A DNA stretch of 64,000 bases from Octopus sinensis (Eukaryota): NCBI RefSeq assembly GCF_006345805.1, contig NC_043016.1, positions 31,682,001-31,746,000 of the forward strand, written 5' to 3'. The notes beneath the pieces are model-generated. The model made no database searches, had not been told where the DNA came from, and saw nothing but the letters and a program-made list of their open reading frames with translations. Shown here in pieces: positions 13,491 to 64,000 of this stretch (its first letter is position 1; each line of letters starts with the position of its first letter). Made by a program: the position numbers and the translations under genes.

Positions 13491-13894
13491 GGAAAAAGAA
13501 AATTAACTATGGATCTCACAGTGATAATAGGATTAGGAAAAAACATTAATTGTAATTACAATAATGACTAATTCAGGAAGTAAGTATAACCTGGATAGCA
13601 AGATGGAAAACAAAGGTTGTAATACTAGTGTGAGGAAAAGCATGTGGATTATTAGTAACATAAACCATCAATGATGCAACCCCATTAAATCAGGTATTAA
13701 ATTTATGAGTAGAAATTATAATAATATACATGTACTAGGAGTGGCTGTGTGGTAAGTAGCTTGCTTACCAACCACATGGTTGTGGGTTCAGTCTCACTGC
13801 GTGGCACCTTGGACAAGTGTTTTCTACCATAGCCTCGGGCCGACAAAAGCCTTGTGAGTGGATTTGGTAGACGGAAATTGAAAAGAAGTCCATC

Positions 13895-27049: not shown

Positions 27050-28450
27050 CTGGTAGGCCAGAAGTTACACCAGGTTCCATTGTCTGATTTGGCTTGGTTT
27101 CTACAGCTGGATGCCCTTCCTAGTGCCAACCACTTTATAGTGTCTGCTGAGTGCTAGACGTGGCAAGCTGGAGAGCTGCACCAGGTTCCAATCTGATTTG
27201 GCTTGGTTTCTACAGCTGGATGCCCTTCCTAGTGCCAACCACTTTATAGTGTGTGCTGAGTGCTAGAGCTGGTAAGCTGGAGAGCTGCACAAGGTTCCAG
27301 TCTGATTTGGCTTGGTTTCTACAGCTGGATGCCCTTCCTAGTGCCAACCACTTTATAGTGTTTGCTGAGTGCTAGAGCTGGCAAGCTGGAGAGCTGCACA
27401 AGGTTCCAGTCTGATTTGGCTTGGTTTCTACAGCTGGATGCCCTTCCTAGTGCCAACCACTTTATAGTGTGTACTGAGTGCTAGAGCTGGCAAGCTGGAG
27501 AGTTGCACCAGGTTCCAATCTGATTTGGCTTGGTTTCTACAGCTGGATGCCCTTCCTAGTGCCAACCACTTTATAGTGTGTGCTGAGTGCTAGAGGTGGC
27601 AAGCTGGAGAGCTGCACAAGGTTCCAGTCTGATTTGGCTTGGTTTCTACAGCTGGATGCCCTTCCTAGTGCCAACCACTTTATAGTGTGTACTGAGTGCT
27701 AGAGATGGCAAGCTGGAGAGCTGCACCAGGTTCCAGTCTGATTTGGCTTGGTTTCTACAGCTGGATGCCCTTCCTAGTGCCAACCAATCTATAGTGTGTG
27801 CTGAGTGCTAGAGGTGGCAAGCTGGAGAGCTGCACAAGGTTCCAGTCTGATTTGGCTTGGTTTCTACAGCTGGATACCCTTCCTAGTGCCAACCACTCTA
27901 TAGTGTGTGCTGAGTGCTAGAGGTGGCAAGCTGGAGAGCTGCACAAGGTTCCAGTCTGATTTGGCTTGGTTTCTACAGCTGGGTGCCCTTCCTAGTGCCA
28001 ACCACTTTATAGTGTGTGCTGAGTGCTAGAGGTGGCAAGCTGGAGAGCTGCCCAAGGTTCCAGTCTGATTTGGCTTGGTTTCTACAGCTGGATGCCCTTC
28101 CTAGTGCCAACCACTTTATAGTGTGTGCTGAGTGCTAGAGGTGGCATGATGGAGAGCTGCACAAGGTTCCAGTCTGATTTGGCTTGGTTTCTACAGCTGG
28201 ATGCCCTTCCTAGTGCCAACCACTTTATAGTGTCTGCTGAGTGCTAGAGGTGGCAAGCTGGAGAGCTGCACAAGGTTCCAGTCTGATTTGGCTTGGTTTC
28301 TACAGCTGGATGCCCTTCCTAGTGCCAACCACTTTATAGTGTGTACTGAGTGCTAGAGCTGGCAAGCTGGAGAGTTGCACCAGGTTCCAATCTGATTTGG
28401 CTTGGTTTCTACAGCTGGATGCCCTTCCTAATGCCAACCACTTTACAGAG
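27050..28450 (-). repeat. Tandem array, 13 x 109 bp, derived from an RTE 3' UTR segment
   Basis: Anchor ctacagctgg recurs at 27101, 27210, 27319, 27428, 27537, 27646, 27755, 27864, 27973, 28082, 28191, 28300 and 28409 (exact 109-bp period). Preceded by the (ATC)n RTE tail at about 27000 and followed by ordinary RTE UTR. Confidence 0.97.
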
Positions 28451-36062: not shown

Positions 36063-36141
36063 GTGTGAGTGAGTGTGTGTGGATGTATGCAACTATATAT
36101 ATATATATATATATATACACCCACGCACAAACATTCATATA

Positions 36142-36172
<31 letters not shown>

Positions 36173-36480
36173 GGGTGTGTATGTGTGTGTATATATATAT
36201 GTATATGTACATGTATGTATATATATATACATATACACACATATATATATATACACATACATATATATGCATATGCATATATATAAATATATATATATAT
36301 GTATATATATATGTGTGTCTATGTACATACACACATGCACATGTACACGTATACATGTGTGTATAATGTTTGTGCATATGTGTATGTTGGTGTGTCCGTG
36401 TATGTGTGTGCATGTGTGAATATGTGTGTGTATGCATGTGTGTGTGTGTGTGTGTGTGTATGTGTTATTATATACATCCA
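35179..36480. repeat. Compound TATG/TG/TA microsatellite field
   Basis: Mixed (TATG)n, (TG)n and (TA)n tracts; source of many spurious ORFs. Confidence 0.95.
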
Positions 36481-40217: not shown

Positions 40218-41480
40218 GTATGTATGTATGTATGTATGTATGTATGTATGTATGTATGTATGTATGTATGTATGTATGTATGTATGTATGTATGTATGTA
40301 TGTATGTATGTATGTATGTATGTATGTATGTATGTATGTATGTATGTATGTATGTATGTATGTATGTATGTATGTATGTATGTATGTATGTATGTATGTA
40401 TGTATGTATGTATGTATGTATGTATGTATGTATGTATGTATGTATGTATGTATGTATGTATGTATGTATGTATGTATGTATGTATGTATGTATGTATGTA
40501 TGTATGTATGTATGTATGTATGTATGTATGTATGTATGTATGTATGTATGTATGTATGTATGTATGTATGTATGTATGTATGTATGTATGTATGTATGTA
40601 TGTATGTATGTATGTATGTATGTATGTATGTATGTATGTATGTATGTATGTATGTATGTATGTATGTATGTATGTATGTATGTATGTATGTATGTATGTA
40701 TGTATGTATGTATGTATGTATGTATGTATGTATGTATGTATGTATGTATGTATGTATGTATGTATGTATGTATGTATGTATGTATGTATGTATGTATGTA
40801 TGTATGTATGTATGTATGTATGTATGTATGTATGTATGTATGTATGTATGTATGTATGTATGTATGTATGTATGTATGTATGTATGTATGTATGTATGTA
40901 TGTATGTATGTATGTATGTATGTATGTATGTATGTATGTATGTATGTATGTATGTATGTATGTATGTATGTATGTATGTATGTATGTATGTATGTATGTA
41001 TGTATGTATGTATGTATGTATGTATGTATGTATGTATGTATGTATGTATGTATGTATGTATGTATGTATGTATGTATGTATGTATGTATGTATGTATGTA
41101 TGTATGTATGTATGTATGTATGTATGTATGTATGTATGTATGTATGTATGTATGTATGTATGTATGTATGTATGTATGTATGTATGTATGTATGTATGTA
41201 TGTATGTATGTATGTATGTATGTATGTATGTATGTATGTATGTATGTATGTATGTATGTATGTATGTATGTATGTATGTATGTATGTATGTATGTATGTA
41301 TGTATGTATGTATGTATGTATGTATGTATGTATGTATGTATGTATGTATGTATGTATGTATGTATGTATGTATGTATGTATGTATGTATGTATGTATGTA
41401 TGTATGTATGTATGTATGTATGTATGTATGTATGTATGTATGTATGTATGTATGTATGTATGTATGTATGTATGTATGTA
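40218..41480. repeat. Perfect (TATG)n microsatellite, about 1.26 kb (about 315 units)
   Basis: Uninterrupted tatg repeat across 21 lines. Degenerate continuation to about 41600. Confidence 0.98.
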
Positions 41481-53984: not shown

Positions 53985-54326
53985 TATAAACTTACTTGGA
54001 AATGGATGCATTGTGTTCAATTAAATAATAAATGATGAAGGGTCCTTTCTCTATGTTTACTTGTCCTGTTTTCCATTTTTTTCTCATTGCTTACGTATTT
54101 CACTTGTTTTTGCCTCATCTGTTTTATTTATTTACTGTATTTGCACACGTTGGTGAAGTCCCTTACCCATATATGGATATGTATATATATTATATGTTAT
54201 TTATTATATATACATACATACATACATATCATCATCATCATCATCATCATCGTTTAACGTCCACTTTCCATGCTAGCATGGGTTGGACGGTTCAACTGGG
54301 GTCTGGGAAGCCAGAAGGCTGCACCA

Positions 54327-55025
54327 GGCCCAGTCTGATCTGGCAATGTTTCTATGGCTGGATGCCCTTCCTAACGCCAACCACTCCGAGAGTGTAGTGG
54401 GTGATTTTTACGTGCCAGACGAGGCTGGCAAACGGCCACGATCGGATGCCAGCCTCATCTGGCACCTGTGCCGGTGGACGTAAAAAAAAAAAATATATAT
54501 ATACAACATACACACTTATACATACATACATATACATACATACACATACACACACACAACACATGCACACCATACGTGCATGTGCACATACACAAACACA
54601 CACACAATGGGCCACTTTCAGTTTCCATCTACCAAATTACCAAATCTACATATATACATGCATACATACACAACACACAGGCCCAGTTGATTGGCATGGT
54701 TCTATGGCTGGATGCCCCTTCCTACGCCAACAACTCCGAGAGTGTAGTGGGTGATTTTTAGTGCCAGACGAGGCTGGCAAACGGCCACGATCGGATGCCA
54801 GCCTCATCTGGCACCTGTGCCGGTGGCACGTAAAAAAAAAAAAATATATATATACATACATACACACATATATACATACATACATATACAGACATACACA
54901 TACACACACACACACATGCACACACATACGTGCATGTGCACATACACAAACACACACACAATGGGCCACTTTCAGTTTCCATCTACCAAATTACCAAATC
55001 TACATATATACATGCATACATACAC
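54327..55025. repeat. Direct tandem duplication, period about 350 bp
   Basis: ctatggctgg at 54352 and 54702. Each copy has RTE UTR, an A-run, (CA/TA)n and atgggccactttcagtttccatctaccaaattaccaaatctac. Confidence 0.9.
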
Positions 55026-56707
55026 ATACACACATGCACGTACACACTAACACACATGCACATGCAATGGACCACTTTCAGTTTCCAAATTATGAAATTA
55101 CCAAAATCCACACGCAAGGCTTTGCTCAACCCAGAGCTATAGTAGAAGTTACTCACCCAAAGAATGATGCCGTTCAGCACTGGGCACTGAACCCACCAAA
55201 ACCACATGTTTGAAAAGCTAACCTCTTAACCACACAGCTGGACTTGTGCCCTCCACATCCATTTAGAAAATGTAATATTTTCAAATACTGATTGCTAGCC
55301 CTGTTTTTGAATTAAGAAACAAAAACGTTGTTTAGCATGAAATTAAAACATTGTCATAAAAAATTCAGTTGACACACTTCAAATGATTTGGAGGGTAAAT
55401 AAGTGGATTAGCAGCTGTTGAAATAATAACATCATTATGGCTCACAATAGGATAGACTTATAAGCATGTCAAGTTTAATATCAAACTTATTTTTATCCAT
55501 GAAAACATTGTGGGAATTATCAAGAAACAAGTTCAACAAGAAAAACTTGTTAAACTACACTAGAAGTTATCATATTTATCGACAATTATATTGTTATATC
55601 TAAACTTGTTTTGTATATATTTCTCCTTGTTAATAATTATGGTGACAGAAATATATATTTAATTAGCTTAGTAGGATTAATTTTTCAGAAGCATTCAGGG
55701 GATGATTTTTTTGTAGTTGTGATAGGTGCAGGCAAGGCTGTGTGGTAAGAAGCTTGCTTCTTACCATACAGCCCGCCAGGTGGCGAGCTGGCAGAAACAT
55801 TAGCACACTGGGTGAAATGCTTAGTGGTATTTCATCTGCAGTTACGTTATGAGTTCAAATTCTGCCGAGGTCGACTTTGCCTTCCATCCTTTTGGGGTCG
55901 ATAAATTAAGTACCAGTTATGCACTGGGGTCAATGTAATTTATTTAACCCCTTTGTCTGTCCTTGTTTGTCCCCTCTATGTTTAGCCCTTTGTGGGAAAT
56001 AAGGAAATAAGAAGCTTGCATCCCAACCACATGGTTCCAGGTTCAGTCCCATTGTATGGCACGTTGGGCAAGTGTTTTCTATTATAGCCTCAGGCCAACC
56101 AAAGCCTTGTGAGTGAATTTAGTAGATGGAAACTGGAAGAATCCCATCATATATATAAATATATAGGGGGAAGTAAGAAGATAAAAAAGCAAAAATGCAC
56201 ATTGGATGCACGATGGATGTGTAATATCAGTACTCATACTCGACAGAGTGTAAGTACCTTGAGAGAAAAGCTGGACCTAAGAAGCATCAGACGTGGTGTG
56301 CAAGAGAGACGTTTGCGCTGGTATGGGCATGTGGTGAGAATGGATGAAGATAGTTGTGTGAAAAAGTGCCACACCCTAGCAGTTGAGGGAACCTGTGGAA
56401 GAGGTAGACCCAGGAAAACCTGGGACGAGGTGGTGAAGCACGACCTTCAAACTTTAGGTCTGACTGAGGAAATGACTAGAGACCGAGACCGATGGCACCT
56501 GTGCGGGTGGCACGTAAAAAGCACCCACTACACTCATAGAGTGGTTGGCGTTTGGAAGGGCATCCAGCCGTAGAAACACTGCCAGATCAGACTGGGCCTG
56601 ATGCAGCCTTCTGGCTTCACAGATCCCAGTTGAACCATCCAACCCATGCTAGCATGGAAAGCGGACGCTAAATGATGATGATGAGGATGATGATATATAT
56701 ATACATA

Positions 56708-59227: not shown

Positions 59228-59516
59228 TCAACAATTGAGGGTAAAATTAATTAATCAATTTCACCAAGTGTTCAGTATGTAAAAGGACCATTTAAGGCGA
59301 ATTCAAAATATTACATTATATAATTAGGGCTTAGTAAAATAAATTACTTTGCCACATACTGAACTTAGTAGAAATAGCAGCCAAAAAAAAATTTTTTTAG
59401 CCGTTTCTACTACTTAAAGAAAATTTCTCTCAGATAATGTTTACTCCAGACAGCTCATATATATATATATATCCTTTAGACATTACTCATCACTTTTCTC
59501 TGTGATTTCATTTCAG

Positions 59517-59753
59517 TGGAACTACCTTAAGTGTGAAAAGGGTAAAATCATTGTCTACATGACAAGCATGAGAGTTGTGAGACAAACATACGACCGCTGC
59601 CAGATTGTACAGAAAATTCTACAGACCCATTTAGTGAAATATGAAGAGAGAGATCTATTTATGAGCAGAGAAAATCAAAGAGAGCTACGTGAAAGACTTG
59701 GCAAGAGTGATGTAACAATTCCACAAGTCTTTGCTGATGGCCTAAATTTAGGG
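59517..59753 (+). CDS. GRXCR1: GRXCR-family glutaredoxin-domain exon
   Basis: Acceptor tttcatttcag| at 59516, donor GGG|gtatgt at 59754, 237 nt, phase 0-0. WNYLKCEKGKIIVYMTSMRVVRQTYDRCQIVQKILQTHLVKYEERDLFMSRENQRELRERLGKSDVTIPQVFADGLNLG is a GRXCR-type Grx domain in frame with the exon ending at 39172. Confidence 0.92.
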
Positions 59754-60384
59754 GTATGTATCCATTTCAACTTCTAGGAATTTTCCAAAATTGTTTTCCT
59801 TTTACTAATTTAAAGGGAGATGAAAAGAAACACAAAAGGTGTTAAGAAGAATATTTAATAATTTTTTGTTTTTAATTACTCTAATTAATATTATAATATC
59901 CATTTGATGTATAATTGATGTCCAATTAGCGAAAATAAGAGATGTCTGAGAGATTATGATGTTGGACTAATATTTGAATCACAGAATCAAATCTACAGAC
60001 ACTTATCTATAGATAAGAGCCTGTAGAGAAGATGTCTGCTTTTTCAGCTGACAAGTTAATGATTCATATTTCATCACTGAGGATAAAGAAAAACACTGAA
60101 TACTTCTTACTCCAGTTAATTCATAGCACTAAAGTAGGTATATTCTGGTCGAAGTATTCTGATGGTATACTATAGAGGCACAGTTGTGGCTGTGTGTAGG
60201 AAGCTTGCTTCCAAACAATACGGTTCCAGGTTCAGTCCCACAGCTTGGCACCAAGTGTCTTCTACTACATCCTCAGGATGATCAAAGCCTTGTGAGTGGA
60301 TTTGGTAGACGAAAACTGAAAGAATCCCATCAGAAGTTAGTTTTTGCATTTATTATATTAGGTATTTGTATATCTATATTTATA

Positions 60385-61188
60385 TATAAGCGAGAAAGAA
60401 GCAACAAGAATGGATAAGTTTTTAGTACAATCGTTTCATACAAAGACAGGCTTTATTAAAAGTTGCAAAAATTGCAGCATATAAACGTGTCCCGTACTCA
60501 TCAGCTAAAATACATGTGAGTTCTCTAGACATCTTAGTGGTTGAGGCTATACTCATGAAGTAATGTAGATAATTAAGTAACATAAACAGATTTCCAAAGT
60601 TCATTAAAGTTCTTTAAGGATGATGCACAGTCTTATCACAGATTTTTAAAAAAGTTTTAATAGCATCACAGAGAAGGTGACTTAATCCATAGTGTACATA
60701 TGAATTTCCAGAGATATGAGGAGGGATTACATACTCACAGACGACAAATTTATCCATGGCTAATCACAATGAGGTGGGTATCAATTCCTGCTTATTAGCA
60801 TTACAGAGAGGGTGAATTAATCCTTTGTATAGGTGCACAATTTCCAGTGGTGCAGATGTAAATTTCCAGAGAAATGAAGAGGAATTTCATATTCACAGAC
60901 GATAAATTTATCAATGGTTGAACACAATGGGGTAGGTATCAATTCTTGCTATATGATTAGGTATTTGCCACATTAATCACATTACTGCTATGTTACTTAA
61001 TTATCTACATTACTTCATGAGTATAGCCTCAACCACTAAGATGTCTAGAGAACTCACATGTATTTTAGCTGATGAGTACGGGACATGTTTATATGCTGCA
61101 ATTTTTGCAACTTTTAATAAAGCCTGTCTTTGTATGAAACGATTGTACTAAAAACTTATCCATTCTTGTTGCTTCTTTCTCGCTTATA
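60385..61188. repeat. Long inverted repeat: two 200-bp arms (60385-60584, 60989-61188) around a 404-bp spacer
   Basis: Hand alignment of arm 1 reverse complement to arm 2 gives 199/200 identity. The one mismatch is G60487 opposite T61086. Confidence 0.95.
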
Positions 61189-61308
61189 ATCACCCCACAT
61201 TACTGTATGGTTAAAACCGTATAGTTTTTTGGTGCATCTAAGTTAGGTACCATATTCAAGTAAATTCATTAAAATTGACTTGAATCTTTATTGCTTTTTT
61301 AATATATT

Positions 61309-61343
<35 letters not shown>

Positions 61344-61678
61344 ACATACACACATACATATATATATGTAGATCCACCAACATCAGCAAAACTGAGTTCT
61401 AGAAGTGCTGTGTGTCCCACCCACACTTAACAAGAAAACTTCTCACACACTCTACCACAACAAACCAAACTATGTCTCTACATCTCTTCTCTTCCTTCAA
61501 TATTTCTGCTTCATGTACTCTGCTTTCCTCCTACTCCCCAATCCTGTCCTTTGGGCCCTGTGTCACTGTATCATTGCTTTCCACTAGCCGGCTGACCTGT
61601 GCATTCTACCCACATGCCCTGTCTCTCTCTATTATTGCTGTCTACTACCCTCCAACCTGTGTGTTCCACGCACGCATG

Positions 61679-61719
<41 letters not shown>

Positions 61720-64000
61720 AACAAGAAAACTTTTCACTCACCCTACCCCAACAAACCAATCTACATCTCCACAACTCTTCTCTTTTTCTCACATTTCTTC
61801 CTTCATTCACTATGCCTAGCTCTCACTCCCCAATCCTGTCCTCACAGCCCTGTTCCTCTATATCGTCACTATCTGGTAGAGCCCCAACTCTATATATATA
61901 CCCCACCCCATTTTTCACCACTCACTCCTCTCTCCACACTCTTTAATACCTACCACTTATATTATGGCATTTTGGACCTCAGAAATATGCCCTGGCACTT
62001 GCCACCACCTATATTTCTCTCTTCCTTTACTCAACCATCCCATTTATATCCTGATCCCTGTCCCTTTTAAGTGTGCCTGGCATTTTGCCACTATCTCTAT
62101 CCTGCTGTCTCCCACTCTCTCTCCCTCCTTCTCCTGCACTTCCCTCAGGTTGAGTAACCATGTATTTCCTTTGCAGCCCACCTGTTTCTGCCACCATTCT
62201 CTCTCTCTCTCTCCCACTCCCATCCACCCCTGCTGGGTAATCTTGAAATTCTTCTACAGCAAGACACCTGTTTCTATCTCTCTGTCTCACTATAACCTTT
62301 CATAATCTGACAAAAGATCACCTCCTCCAATGCCCCTTCCCCTCTTGAAGGTTTTTTTTTTTTTATGTCTTGCAAGTACTTGTGGTGCCACTTAATGTCT
62401 TTATGTCTTGCAAGTACTTGCAGGTGCCGCTTAAAAGGATCCAGTCCACATTGTAAATTGGTTATTGTTCAGAAGGGCATTCAGCTGTAAAAACCATATT
62501 ACAAATAATTGATGTTTAACCCTTTAGCATTTAAACCAGCCATATCTGGTCTAAATATTCTAAGTGTTTTATGTTCAAACCAGACAATACCAGTTTTTCA
62601 CATCTGCCCTGTAATGTCAGTCTAAAAATAAACAATCACACTTTTAAAAGCTTAAAGCTACAAGATAATACATGATTATTTTTTTTTCTTCTTTTAATGT
62701 GAATAAATAAGCTTTACATTTGACAGAGTAATCTGAATGCTAAAAGGTTAAATAAAGTTAACAGACTTTCTGTATTTCTGAATGGATAGCATATGTACCT
62801 ACCATGTTGTAAATACTTCTCTTTTTTTCTTTTTTTTAAGTCTCTTTCAAAAACAATATTTGTGGTTGTAGATAATTGAGATATTGTCTCCTGTTTTTTC
62901 ATCCCTGCAGTTTGACATAATTAAAACATCTCACATTGTTAAAAGTATTAACTTTAGGTCATAAAATGACCTTCATAAATTTTTGAATTGACGTTAAGGC
63001 TATTTTAGAGAGGATGGGGTTCTACCAGTTCATTTGCATTCATAAAAGACAATATGAATATCAGAAATTAAAAAACACTTTTGTAATTTAAGGCTTATTG
63101 TTTCTTTTATAATACCAATTTTTTTCCACACCTATCAGTCTCAATAGAGGTAAGCAAATGATTCTTTCTCTTTATCACTAAGGCTGTTATATTACTTTAT
63201 TAAAATTTGGTGGGCTTATTGCATTAAGTATGTAAGCACTAATCTAACTATTTGAATAGTTCTGGGTTATTTGTTTAAGTAAAGCTTAAAACCTTTGTGT
63301 TATCATTTGTGTTTGTGGTTATTGGTGCTGAGTAAACAGCACTTTCATACCTAGCCATAGCAAAAGTTTAAGTACAGATCATGAACATATAGTTCAGTCT
63401 TAGGCAAAGATAGGAGAAACTTTTTAGTTCGGGAGCAAAACGTGTTATATATTTCTCAGTGTACATAAGCTGCAGAATTGTTAGCACACCTGACAAAATG
63501 CTTTTTGTTTGTCTTTACATCCTGAGTTCAAATTCCACCAAGGTCAACTTGGTCTTTTATCCTTTCAGGGTCAATAAAATAAATAACATTTGAGCACCGA
63601 GATCGATGTAATTGACTTACCCACTCCCTCAAAATTGCTGGCCTTGTGCCAAAATTTGAAACCAATATTTCACAGTATACATCATCTATATTAAGAAAAA
63701 TGATGAATCTTTAAGTTTCTTCAAATTCACAATTGTGTAACTTTTAATTAAATTACTATTTTGGTCTTAAGACTTAACATTTTTTTTTTCATATCAGTAG
63801 ATCGTTTCAAATTTGAATGGGAAGGGCTTTTCATTCTTTGGTTTTGAATCATATTTCAGATTCCAGCATAGTTATTGATTTTTCTAGAGTTTCAGTGTCT
63901 CTGCGGCCAGGACTGTCACTCACATGTAGATCTCTATAGTAACAGCAAACATTGCTCCATCAACAAAACTAAGACAAGGCTTCCTAGGCATACATTCATA

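What the first reader, a model, noticed from the sequence alone, without database searches (positions are those of the whole stretch)
60385..61188. 200-bp near-perfect inverted repeat in the GRXCR intron that would fold into fully paired dsRNA on the sense strand
Seen: two 200-bp arms matching at 199/200 around a 404-bp spacer, 632 bp downstream of the GRXCR donor at 59753. The single mismatch (G60487/T61086) is a G-U wobble on the plus strand, but a C-A mismatch on the minus strand. The arms match no SINE, LINE or MITE elsewhere in the window, and the dispersed repeat copies here are generally more diverged. The ends can be read as TA|taagc...gctta|TA, a possible TA TSD. Known: long perfect hairpins are ADAR and Dicer substrates, coleoids edit RNA very heavily, and about 200-bp TIRs occur in IR-DR Tc1 and Foldback elements. 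Inference: a young uncharacterised long-TIR element, a template-switch inversion, or a hairpin-RNA/editing locus. With only one mismatch, the G-U could be chance.
Basis: partly seen in the sequence, partly recalled or inferred. Interest (0 to 1): 0.72.

Follow-up and report, generated by a model that had tools for sequence, protein, structure and literature searches.

The report
Young insertion-made inverted repeat in intron
The near-perfect 200-bp inverted repeat is real, but it looks like a recent by-product of DNA insertion or copying in an intron, not a purpose-built hairpin-RNA gene; at most its transcript would be a passive target for RNA editing.

Summary
Arms 60385-60584 and 60989-61188 match at 199/200, with a 404-bp spacer, 632 bp after a conserved splice donor of a glutaredoxin (GRXCR-like) exon. 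Nothing else in the 64-kb window resembles the arms or spacer.

- **The mismatch:** it is a CpG-to-TpG transition. It gives G-U on the sense strand with 50% chance, so it says nothing about selection.
- **The TA "TSD":** TA is its own reverse complement, so it cannot be told apart from two more bases of repeat.
- **New finding:** the 36 bp just before the right arm (60952-60987) reproduce the left outer flank (12-15 nt) and then the right outer flank (10 nt). The right arm is therefore bracketed by CACATTACTG, and the left arm plus spacer by ATTAGGTATTTG. Among 62,900 same-geometry placements in the window, this pairing occurs only at this locus.

A simple long-TIR transposon does not predict this. 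Two models fit:

- **Retroelement model:** two head-to-head, duplication-making insertions of one young retroelement-like unit, the right one 5'-truncated. I favour this slightly (about 0.4).
- **Copying model:** a local template-switch copy of the left arm (about 0.33).

No coding capacity, ribozyme or Rfam family was found. Published work reports no dedicated siRNA pathway in molluscs. Passive ADAR editing of the transcript is plausible but untested. Genome-wide copy number could not be measured with these collections.

The parts
59517..59753 (+). Exon of a glutaredoxin-domain (GRXCR-like) gene. Acceptor ...TTTCAG|TGG, donor GGG|GTATGT at 59753/59754.
   Evidence: Translation GKIIVYMTSMRVV...ADGLNLG. 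Pfam Glutaredoxin PF00462, E = 1.1e-10. A homologous exon on ENA contig L001 ends at the same codon with GT. No downstream exon motif was found up to the window end, so 'intronic' is an inference.
60167..60331 (+). Old tRNA-like SINE copy just upstream. It is followed by a decayed TA-rich tract (60332-60384) that reaches the left arm.
   Evidence: It matches more than 10 other copies in the window at 73-80% (alignments). The family's second half is not detectable after the repeat.
60354..60368 (+). F1, outer copy of direct repeat TAT-ATTAGGTATTTG (12 nt exact, 15 with one gap). Proposed target duplication of the left block.
   Evidence: Exact 12-mer shared with 60956-60967. The rate of such a match at the same geometry elsewhere in the window is about 0.05%.
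60369..60384 (+). 16-nt TA-rich linker TATATCTATATTTATA between F1 and the left arm. It is either a possible element tail or resident TA tract.
   Evidence: Sequence. Its role is inferred.
60385..60584 (-). Left arm. In the favoured model it is the 3'-terminal 200 bp of a 587-bp minus-strand copy (60369-60955).
   Evidence: 199/200 complementary to 60989-61188. 4 CpGs. No internal sub-repeats beyond one weak 21-nt pair.
60585..60951 (-). Unique part of the spacer, including two diverged tandem units of about 158 bp (60657-60803 and 60792-60959).
   Evidence: 83% over 101 nt, 74% gapped. No match elsewhere in the window. Short ORFs have no significant Pfam hit.
60952..60987 (+). Empty-site-like segment TATGATTAGGTATTTG-CCACATTAAT-CACATTACTG. 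It joins a copy of the left outer flank (F1') and a copy of the right outer flank (F2') through 10 nt.
   Evidence: Both matches occur together only at this locus among 62,900 same-geometry placements.
60989..61188 (+). Right arm, the derived and inserted copy. It is preceded by 1 extra nt (C60988) and followed by 7 nt (ATCACCC, 61189-61195). It carries the CpG-to-TpG change at 61086.
   Evidence: It is bracketed by CACATTACTG at 60978-60987 and 61196-61205. Its first bases, TATGTTA, resemble the target after F2, TATGGTTA.
61196..61205 (+). F2, outer copy of the 10-nt direct repeat CACATTACTG that flanks the right arm.
   Evidence: The empirical rate for random 200-bp segments in the window is about 0.13% outside one tandem array.

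Best explanation
This is a young, non-coding inverted duplication made by insertion, not a gene.

**Structure (shown).** The region reads, left to right:
- left flank ending in F1
- a 16-nt TA-rich linker
- the left arm plus spacer
- F1', then 10 nt, then F2'
- 1 extra nt, then the right arm, then 7 nt
- F2 and the right flank

The 36 bp between the spacer and the right arm therefore reproduce the two outer flanks in order, like an uninterrupted copy of the original target.

**Origin (inferred).** The original sequence was ...TATATTAGGTATTTG-CCACATTAAT-CACATTACTG-TATGG.... It received two duplication-making, target-primed integrations of the same young retroelement-like unit, head to head and 10 bp apart.
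- One is a 587-bp copy on the minus strand (60369-60955), bracketed by a 12-15-bp duplication.
- The other is a copy 5'-truncated to 200 bp on the plus strand (60988-61195), bracketed by a 10-bp duplication.

Both copies end at the same 3' terminus (...CTCGCTTATA). That is why the outer ends look like terminal inverted repeats. The inner end of the repeat is simply the truncation point of the short copy. The two integrations may have been independent, or one compound event of the kind described for Penelope-like elements.

**Consequence (inferred, not shown).** Transcribed within the GRXCR-like pre-mRNA, the arms would form a 200-bp perfect duplex looping out 404 nt. That duplex would be promiscuously edited by ADAR. 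Nothing indicates that this is selected for.
For: - The arms are 199/200 identical, while the spacer's internal tandem units are only 74-83% alike and every other repeat family in the window is 72-92%. The event is therefore recent, and the unit carried older internal structure.
- The right arm is bracketed by an exact 10-mer lying 1 nt and 7 nt from its ends. The left arm plus spacer is bracketed by an exact 12-mer (15 with one gap).
- Empirical background rates at the same geometry are about 0.13% and about 0.05%. The two occur together only at this locus among 62,900 placements.
- Duplications of 10-15 bp, 5' truncation, extra bases and microhomology at the 5' junction (TATGTTA against TATGGTTA) are standard features of target-primed reverse transcription (established knowledge of LINE/SINE integration).
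- Head-to-head inverted 5'-truncated copies are described as frequent outcomes of Penelope-like element integration. So are terminal repeats of about 180-220 bp, 8-10-bp TSDs, capture of unrelated sequence between repeats, and a (TA)n insertion bias (PMC8557442; PMC3846280).
- The single arm difference is a CpG transition, as expected for real post-insertion decay and not for assembly error.
Against: - No second copy exists in the window, and no reverse transcriptase, endonuclease or hammerhead ribozyme signal was found. No retroelement family is therefore identified.
- Two integrations of one family 10 bp apart would be a striking coincidence unless they were coupled or site-preferring.
- The sequence after the right copy's 3' end (ATCACCC) does not look like the TA-rich stretch after the left copy.
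- The 12-mer is not adjacent to an arm boundary. Taken alone it is only marginal: region-wide expectation about 0.05, and the gapped alignment has z = 0.8.
- The flanking repeats were found post hoc.
- Genome-wide copy number, the decisive datum, could not be obtained. The collections lack even the window's most abundant SINE.
Confidence: 0.4

Rival explanations
1. Local inverted duplication by template switching or fold-back priming during replication or break repair. The left arm and spacer were resident sequence. A nascent strand left the template near 60987, copied the left arm backwards from 60584 to 60385, and returned about 10 bp upstream of where it left. This created the right arm bracketed by CACATTACTG.
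For: - It explains why source and copy lie only 404 bp apart without invoking coincidence.
- It fits the single locus seen in the window.
- The short fillers at both junctions (C; ATCACCC) and the imperfect microhomologies are typical of such events: CTG/CAG and TATG at the inner junction, TA at the outer.
- The 10-bp flanking duplication follows if the return point lies upstream of the departure point.
Against: - It does not explain the 12-15-nt F1/F1' repeat, which lies next to F2' in flank order. An extra templated insertion or an older TSD would be needed.
- In the older-TSD case, both the copy's end point and its insertion point fall within about 20 bp of the ends of that older insertion.
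- A 200-bp copied tract is long for described short-range template-switch mutations (my own knowledge, not tested).
- The microhomologies are imperfect.
Confidence: 0.33
2. A single young non-autonomous DNA transposon of about 800 bp (60387-61186), with 198-200-bp terminal inverted repeats, inserted at a TA (Tc1/mariner-like, or another long-TIR or Foldback-like family).
For: - Near-identical arms end sharply, and there is no coding capacity.
- TA lies on both sides, at the edge of a TA-rich tract.
- Size and layout are MITE-like.
- Palindromic MITEs are known to be major dsRNA sources in other animals (PMC5625713).
Against: - The TA is palindromic, so it is indistinguishable from more repeat.
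- No longer TSD exists at any trimming (and direct reading of the sequence).
- The termini TAAGCG... do not resemble the CAGT/CAGG-type Tc1/mariner ends (my own knowledge).
- There are no IR-DR direct repeats or tandem sub-repeats in the arms.
- Most importantly, a cut-and-paste insertion gives no reason for the element's interior to contain an ordered copy of its own two outer flanks next to one arm.
Confidence: 0.12
3. A selected hairpin-RNA locus: a source of small RNAs, or a cis-acting dsRNA that recruits ADAR or regulates GRXCR-like splicing.
For: The plus strand folds into an uninterrupted 200-bp duplex within the transcription unit. Octopus shows extreme hyper-editing associated with long dsRNA (PMC5625713).
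Against: - The G-U is a CpG transition with even odds of landing on either strand.
- The minus strand folds almost equally well.
- There is no Rfam hit.
- The arms match no gene or protein.
- Molluscs appear to lack a dedicated siRNA pathway (PMC12479628).
- The repeat is too young (0.5% divergence) for conservation to be assessed.
- Inverted repeat pairs are common in this window.
Confidence: 0.03
4. Assembly artefact, such as a fold-back chimeric read or a mis-join.
For: Perfect palindromic structures are a known failure mode of long-read and amplified libraries (my own knowledge). Complex inverted retroelement insertions are said to trouble assemblies (PMC8557442).
Against: - Fold-back chimeras are symmetric about a point with little or no unique spacer. 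Here a 404-bp asymmetric spacer with its own old tandem structure separates the arms.
- The arms differ at a CpG.
- The right arm has clean flanking duplications.
- There are no Ns in the window.
Confidence: 0.03

Closest known systems
Head-to-head inverted 5'-truncated insertions of Penelope-like elements (pseudo-LTRs in inverted orientation)
   Same: - Two copies with their 3' ends outward form terminal inverted repeats of about 200 bp.
- The repeats are near-identical because they were made at or around one integration.
- TSDs of 8-10 bp are reported for these elements, and unrelated or non-coding sequence can lie between the repeats.
- They insert preferentially near (TA)n tracts (PMC8557442, PMC3846280).
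   Different: - No hammerhead ribozyme, reverse transcriptase or GIY-YIG remnant was found.
- No TSD flanks the whole unit.
- Here a target-derived 36-bp segment separates the two copies. The described PLE 'tail' is element-derived, and PLE junctions are direct or palindromic.
- Naiad-type PLEs are reported as long-inactive remnants in cephalopods.
Adjacent inverted SINE/LINE copies (as with inverted Alu pairs) that form intronic dsRNA edited by ADAR
   Same: Two inverted retroposed copies sit in one pre-mRNA, each with its own TSD, and form a long duplex. Other such pairs occur in this same window.
   Different: Typical pairs are independent old copies at 72-92% identity, hundreds to thousands of bp apart. 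This pair is 99.5% identical, its target sites are 10 bp apart, and its family is otherwise unseen in 64 kb.
Short-range template-switch or fold-back inverted duplications (the proposed birth route of plant proto-miRNA genes and Drosophila hpRNAs)
   Same: A local inverted copy with a spacer, short fillers and microhomology at the junctions, a new perfect hairpin, and a single locus.
   Different: The second (F1/F1') flank duplication is not predicted. The arms have no detectable homology to a gene that could be a target.
Long-TIR non-autonomous DNA transposons (IR-DR Tc1 derivatives, Foldback, palindromic MITEs)
   Same: About 800 bp, arms about 200 bp, non-coding, a possible TA at both ends.
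   Different: There are no DR motifs or tandem sub-repeats in the arms. The termini are unlike Tc1/mariner. An internal copy of the insertion site is present.

Membership tests
Tc1/mariner-type long-TIR (IR-DR) element or MITE | TA target-site duplication that can be told apart from the TIR | tested here: inconclusive
   The repeat begins and ends TATA. TA is self-complementary and the left flank is a TA-rich tract.
Tc1/mariner-type long-TIR (IR-DR) element or MITE | Paired direct repeats (transposase-binding sites) at the outer and inner ends of each about-200-bp IR | tested here: not met
   The only internal repeat is one 21-nt pair at 71% identity, 55 nt apart, in the inner half of the arm.
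Tc1/mariner-type long-TIR (IR-DR) element or MITE | Multiple genomic copies sharing both termini | not testable with these tools
   No other copy in the window. The public collections lack this organism; the SINE control was negative.
Foldback elements | Long arms built from short tandem sub-repeats | tested here: not met
   TRF finds only a 9-nt x 2.1 motif in each arm. The repeat finder shows no arrays.
Non-LTR retroelement copies integrated by target-primed reverse transcription | Each copy flanked by its own variable-length (about 7-20 bp) target-site duplication | tested here: met
   A 10-nt exact repeat brackets the right arm. A 12-nt exact repeat (15 with a gap) brackets the left arm plus spacer. 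Jointly they are unique to this locus.
Non-LTR retroelement copies integrated by target-primed reverse transcription | Common 3' terminus with variable 5' truncation | tested here: inconclusive
   Both copies end at ...CTCGCTTATA, and one is 200 bp while the other is 587 bp, which is consistent. Two copies cannot establish a family.
Non-LTR retroelement copies integrated by target-primed reverse transcription | 3' tail (poly-A or simple repeat), and a related autonomous element or other family members | tested here: inconclusive
   The left copy is followed by 16 TA-rich nt, the right copy by ATCACCC. No relatives in the window. The genome is not available.
Penelope-like elements | Hammerhead ribozyme in the pseudo-LTR (canonical EN+ clades) | tested here: not met
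   An Rfam scan of 59400-62200 at E <= 1 gives no ribozyme hit. The only hits are microsatellite-driven miRNA-like matches outside the repeat.
Penelope-like elements | RT and GIY-YIG endonuclease ORF, or 3'-end similarity to an autonomous PLE | tested here: not met
   ORFs within the repeat and spacer are at most 60 aa. There is no Pfam hit above cut-off and no protein homologue.
Penelope-like elements | Inverted 5'-truncated copy head-to-head with the main copy, giving terminal inverted repeats | tested here: met
   The geometry matches the description in PMC8557442 and PMC3846280. Here, however, 36 bp of target-like DNA lie between the copies.
hpRNA / endo-siRNA hairpin locus | A host siRNA pathway (siRNA Dicer and Ago) and small RNAs from the arms | not testable with these tools
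   There are no small-RNA data here. The literature reports no dedicated siRNA machinery or endo-siRNA signal in 32 molluscs, including O. bimaculoides (PMC12479628).
hpRNA / endo-siRNA hairpin locus | Arms derived from, and complementary to, a target gene | tested here: not met
   The arm ORF has no homologue among 5.8 billion proteins. There is no Pfam hit above cut-off and no match in the window.
ADAR hyper-editing substrate (intronic long dsRNA) | Long, nearly perfect intramolecular duplex within a transcribed region | tested here: met
   A 200-bp uninterrupted stem on the plus strand, -430.8 kcal/mol. It lies 632 nt downstream of a conserved donor. Transcription itself is inferred.
ADAR hyper-editing substrate (intronic long dsRNA) | Clustered A-to-G differences in RNA | not testable with these tools
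   No RNA-seq is available.
Template-switch / fold-back inverted duplication | Microhomology at both junctions, and a local, single-copy source | tested here: inconclusive
   The microhomologies are imperfect: CTG and TATG at the inner junction, TA at the outer, with 1-nt and 7-nt fillers. The source is single-copy in the window, but the genome is not available.

The most novel reading that the evidence does not exclude
The locus records an undescribed, currently active retroelement family (or integration mode) in this cephalopod. In one compound event it would lay down two head-to-head copies on either side of an intact copy of the target site. Such a family would create perfect 200-bp hairpins inside genes and continually feed new ADAR substrates into the transcriptome. 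A smaller possibility is that this hairpin has already been co-opted to modulate the GRXCR-like transcript.
Probability: 0.07. Interest if true: 0.6.

Novelty: new member of a known kind. Interest (0 to 1): 0.27.

Why it matters
As it stands, this is one more young inverted repeat in a genome that is reported to be unusually rich in dsRNA-forming loci. Its main value is as a clean, datable example.

Because the arms differ by a single CpG transition and the flanking duplications are intact, the junctions still record how the hairpin was made. If the genome shows many copies with the same 3' end, the locus points to a recently active, unclassified retroelement that manufactures perfect intronic hairpins. 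That would be relevant to where cephalopod ADAR substrates come from. If the locus is unique, it is a rare, well-preserved 200-bp template-switch duplication.

Either way it offers a natural test substrate for hyper-editing of a perfect duplex in a neural or sensory gene. Any claim of function would need RNA data.

Tried and rejected
- **Tandem array extending into the flanks.** By eye the spacer's tandem array seemed to continue into both flanks, which would have made the arms insertions into a satellite. Local alignments against shuffles gave z of about 0, so I dropped it.
- **Right flank as the missing half of the upstream SINE.** This would have provided a paralogous empty site. A profile built from 8 window copies gave only E > 1 hits on the wrong strand, so I dropped it.
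- **SINE (TA)n run as a 3' tail.** I first read it as a tail supporting a TA-tailed retroposition machinery. The family alignment shows that in many copies the microsatellite is internal to a longer composite. I do not rely on it.
- **Paralogous empty sites from other SINE copies.** The apparent extension of two copies to the left arm's edge is only TA low complexity.
- **External copy-number searches.**
  - An arm 25-mer in metagenome, GTDB genome and viral contigs gave 0 hits.
  - The positive control, the core of the window's most abundant SINE, also gave 0 hits. These negatives are therefore uninformative.
- **Protein route to other copies or orthologous introns.** The arm ORF has no homologue. 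The GRXCR-like exon finds only 62-74% identical relatives, so the window's species and its close relatives are not in the collection. The one locus fetched (L001) shares no DNA similarity.
- **Rfam at E <= 1** found nothing in the repeat. **Pfam on the internal ORFs** gave only a sub-threshold DUF223 hit.
- **Literal search of papers** for the SINE core string gave 0 hits.
- **Inversion with staggered breaks.** I considered this as a source of the inverted duplication. It predicts inverted, not direct, relations between the inner and outer flank copies, so I rejected it.
- **Old palindrome homogenised by gene conversion.** This is unlikely, because the 22 flank-repeat bases are all intact while the old tandem units have diverged about 20%.
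Full report
**1. The observation.**

The sequence contains two 200-nt arms, 60385-60584 and 60989-61188, that are reverse complements at 199 of 200 positions. They are separated by 404 nt. The only difference is G60487 against T61086. The repeat cannot be extended in either direction without gaps.

The left arm begins 632 nt after a splice donor (GGG|GTATGT, 59753/59754). That donor closes an exon (about 59517-59753) encoding a glutaredoxin fold (Pfam PF00462, E = 1.1e-10). A homologous exon on an unrelated ENA contig ends at the same codon followed by GT, so the donor is conserved. No downstream exon is visible before the window ends. 'Intronic' is therefore a well-founded inference, not a demonstration.

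Folded as RNA, the plus strand gives an unbroken 200-bp stem (-430.8 kcal/mol, z = -35). The minus strand gives the same stem with one C-A bulge (-414.3 kcal/mol).

Nothing else in the 64-kb window resembles the arms or the spacer, even with nhmmer --max or word-7 blastn. The other inverted pairs in the window are copies of two abundant SINE families at 72-92% identity.

**2.

The mismatch lies in a CpG. The left arm reads AACGTGT, and the right arm reads ACATGTT, the complement of AACATGT. It is therefore a C-to-T transition at a CpG on the plus strand of the right arm, the commonest mutation where CpGs are methylated. Of the four cytosines at this paired CpG site, deamination of two gives G-U on the plus strand and of the other two gives C-A. 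The 'sense-strand wobble' is a 50:50 outcome.

The proposed TA target-site duplication cannot be told apart from two more bases of repeat, because TA is self-complementary. The repeat actually starts and ends TATA, next to a TA-rich tract. No longer duplication appears at any trimming of the ends (and direct reading of the sequence).

**3. Anatomy of the repeat.**

The arms contain no IR-DR type direct repeats and no tandem sub-repeats. The spacer contains two diverged tandem units of about 158 bp, 60657-60803 and 60792-60959. They are 83% identical over the best 101 nt and 74% gapped. The spacer's internal structure is therefore much older than the arm duplication.

ORFs are at most 60 aa. 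They have no homologue among 5.8 billion proteins and no Pfam hit above cut-off. An Rfam scan at E <= 1 finds nothing in the repeat, and in particular no hammerhead ribozyme or miRNA family. The only hits are microsatellite-driven matches at 61300-61740 and a weak one at 59760-59827.

**4. The new observation.**

I listed all exact direct matches of 10 nt or more in 60250-61330. Apart from microsatellite and tandem-unit matches, two remained.

- CACATTACTG occurs at 60978-60987, 1 nt before the right arm, and at 61196-61205, 7 nt after it.
- ATTAGGTATTTG occurs at 60357-60368, 16 nt before the left arm, and at 60956-60967. It extends to TAT(G)ATTAGGTATTTG with one gap.

The 36 nt just before the right arm (60952-60987) read TATGATTAGGTATTTG-CCACATTAAT-CACATTACTG. 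They therefore consist of a copy of the left outer flank, then 10 nt, then a copy of the right outer flank, in that order.

To gauge chance, I slid the same 200/404/200 geometry along the whole window.

- A flanking 10-mer occurs at about 0.13% of placements outside one tandem array.
- The 12-mer relation occurs at about 0.05% of placements.
- Both together occur only at the real locus, out of 62,900 placements.

The discovery was post hoc, and the 12-mer alone is marginal: its gapped alignment has z = 0.8 against shuffles over the whole spacer. The ordered, boundary-adjacent pairing is nevertheless hard to ascribe to chance. In addition, the first bases of the right arm (TATGTTA) resemble the target sequence that follows the outer 10-mer (TATGGTTA). 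That is microhomology at the inner junction.

**5. What this implies.**

The region reads, left to right:

- left flank ending in F1
- a 16-nt TA-rich linker
- the left arm plus spacer
- F1', then 10 nt, then F2'
- C, then the right arm, then ATCACCC
- F2 and the right flank

The robust inference (I put it at about 0.75) is that the right arm is a secondary, inserted copy bracketed by a short duplication of its target. A one-step cut-and-paste insertion of an 804-bp long-TIR transposon gives no reason for the element's interior to hold an ordered copy of its own outer flanks. Together with the missing IR-DR and Foldback features, this moves that reading to about 0.12.

**6. Mechanism.**

*Favoured model (about 0.4).* Two target-primed, duplication-making integrations of one young retroelement-like unit, head to head.

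- One is a 587-bp minus-strand copy with a 12-15-bp duplication.
- The other is a plus-strand copy 5'-truncated to 200 bp, with a 10-bp duplication.
- Both end at ...CTCGCTTATA.

This accounts for every flank feature. It explains the sharp inner boundary as the truncation point, the identical outer ends, the extra bases and the junction microhomology. It also explains the contrast between young arms and old internal tandem units, which would have been carried in the master copy.

The weakness is the proximity: two hits 10 bp apart need either site preference or a compound event. Compound tandem and inverted insertions are described as common for Penelope-like elements.

- An inverted 5'-truncated copy adjacent to the main copy, with terminal repeats of about 180-220 bp.
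- TSDs of 8-10 bp, or none.
- Capture of unrelated DNA between repeats.
- A bias toward (TA)n targets.

These features come from PMC8557442 and PMC3846280. I use this as a 'works like' comparison only, because membership fails on several counts.

- There is no ribozyme, RT or endonuclease.
- There is no TSD around the whole unit.
- The PLE 'tail' is element-derived, whereas this segment is target-derived.

*Main rival (about 0.33).* A local template-switch or fold-back-priming copy of the left arm. It explains the 404-bp proximity for free, and it explains the junction fillers and the 10-bp duplication. It does not explain the second flank repeat without further assumptions.

Both models predict a passive structural mutation. 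They are separated cleanly by genome-wide copy number and by intermediate alleles, neither of which these tools can supply. The metagenome, prokaryote-genome and viral collections contain neither the arm nor the window's commonest SINE core. The protein collection lacks the window's species: the best exon hits are 62-74% identical.

**7. Function.**

No evidence supports a dedicated hairpin-RNA gene. A survey of 32 molluscs, including O. bimaculoides, found no siRNA-class Dicer or Argonaute and no Dicer-type small-RNA signal (PMC12479628). An endo-siRNA role is therefore unlikely.

A 200-bp perfect duplex inside a pre-mRNA is a textbook ADAR substrate. Octopus shows the strongest hyper-editing signal among the animals surveyed, together with an exceptionally high genomic density of near-perfect dsRNA-forming loci, mostly inverted repeat pairs (PMC5625713). 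Editing here is plausible but generic, and it is untested.

At the DNA level, long perfect inverted repeats with short spacers are prone to hairpin or cruciform-mediated deletion (established knowledge). That would also favour a short lifespan for this structure.

An assembly artefact is unlikely (about 0.03). The spacer is asymmetric and structured, the arms differ at a CpG, and the junctions carry clean duplications.

**8. Novelty and score.**

This is a new, unclassified instance of a known kind of thing: a young insertion- or copy-derived intronic inverted repeat. It would become interesting only if the genome shows a family that repeatedly makes such pairs, or if RNA data show a specific effect. 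Interest is 0.27.

It could not be verified here.

Noticed in passing
window 27068-28445: Tandem array of a 109-bp unit, 12.6 copies, 96% matches. The unit resembles the internal part of the second abundant SINE family (CAGTCTGATTTGGC...GGATGCCCTTCC...), so a SINE fragment appears to have been amplified into a young satellite-like array.
   Followed up: partly
window 54222-54417 and 56508-56702: Inverted pair of copies of the second SINE family, about 195 nt, 91% complementary, 2.1 kb apart. It is the next-best dsRNA-forming pair in the window and a natural comparison for editing of imperfect against perfect duplexes.
   Followed up: partly
window 54325-54682 and 54678-55037: Direct tandem duplication of about 355 bp at 95% identity, partly overlapping the SINE copy above. 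It is a second young local duplication within 6 kb of the finding.
   Followed up: no
window 61418-61581 and 61709-61873: Direct repeat with a period of about 291 bp, 73-81% identical, separated by a (CA)n/(CACG)n microsatellite, 230 bp downstream of the right arm. It is unrelated to the arms.
   Followed up: no
window about 40218-41468: Very long simple-sequence tract (>1.2 kb). It matches the TG/TA-rich internal microsatellite of the tRNA-like SINE at regular 8-nt offsets.
   Followed up: no
window: SINE copies at 13715, 58152, 10415(-), 41999(-), 43508, 15666(-) and others: The tRNA-like SINE is often a composite: a tRNA-like half, an internal (TA)n/(TG)n microsatellite, then a second half of about 200 bp (CCCC..GCTTGACAACTGATGCTGG...). 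Some copies, including the one at 60167-60331 beside the finding, lack the second half. Whether these are two elements that co-occur or one element that gets truncated is unresolved.
   Followed up: partly
window 36098-36345: Zero-spacer palindrome-like region with 124-nt arms, 73% complementary, within a low-complexity area.
   Followed up: no
L001 3001-3207 (ENA ERZ26168041, contig of 50,690 bp): A GRXCR-like glutaredoxin exon, 74% identical in protein, sits in a 'metagenome' assembly. It has the same exon end and GT donor as the window's exon, so this is evidently eukaryotic (animal) DNA within a metagenome record.
   Followed up: partly
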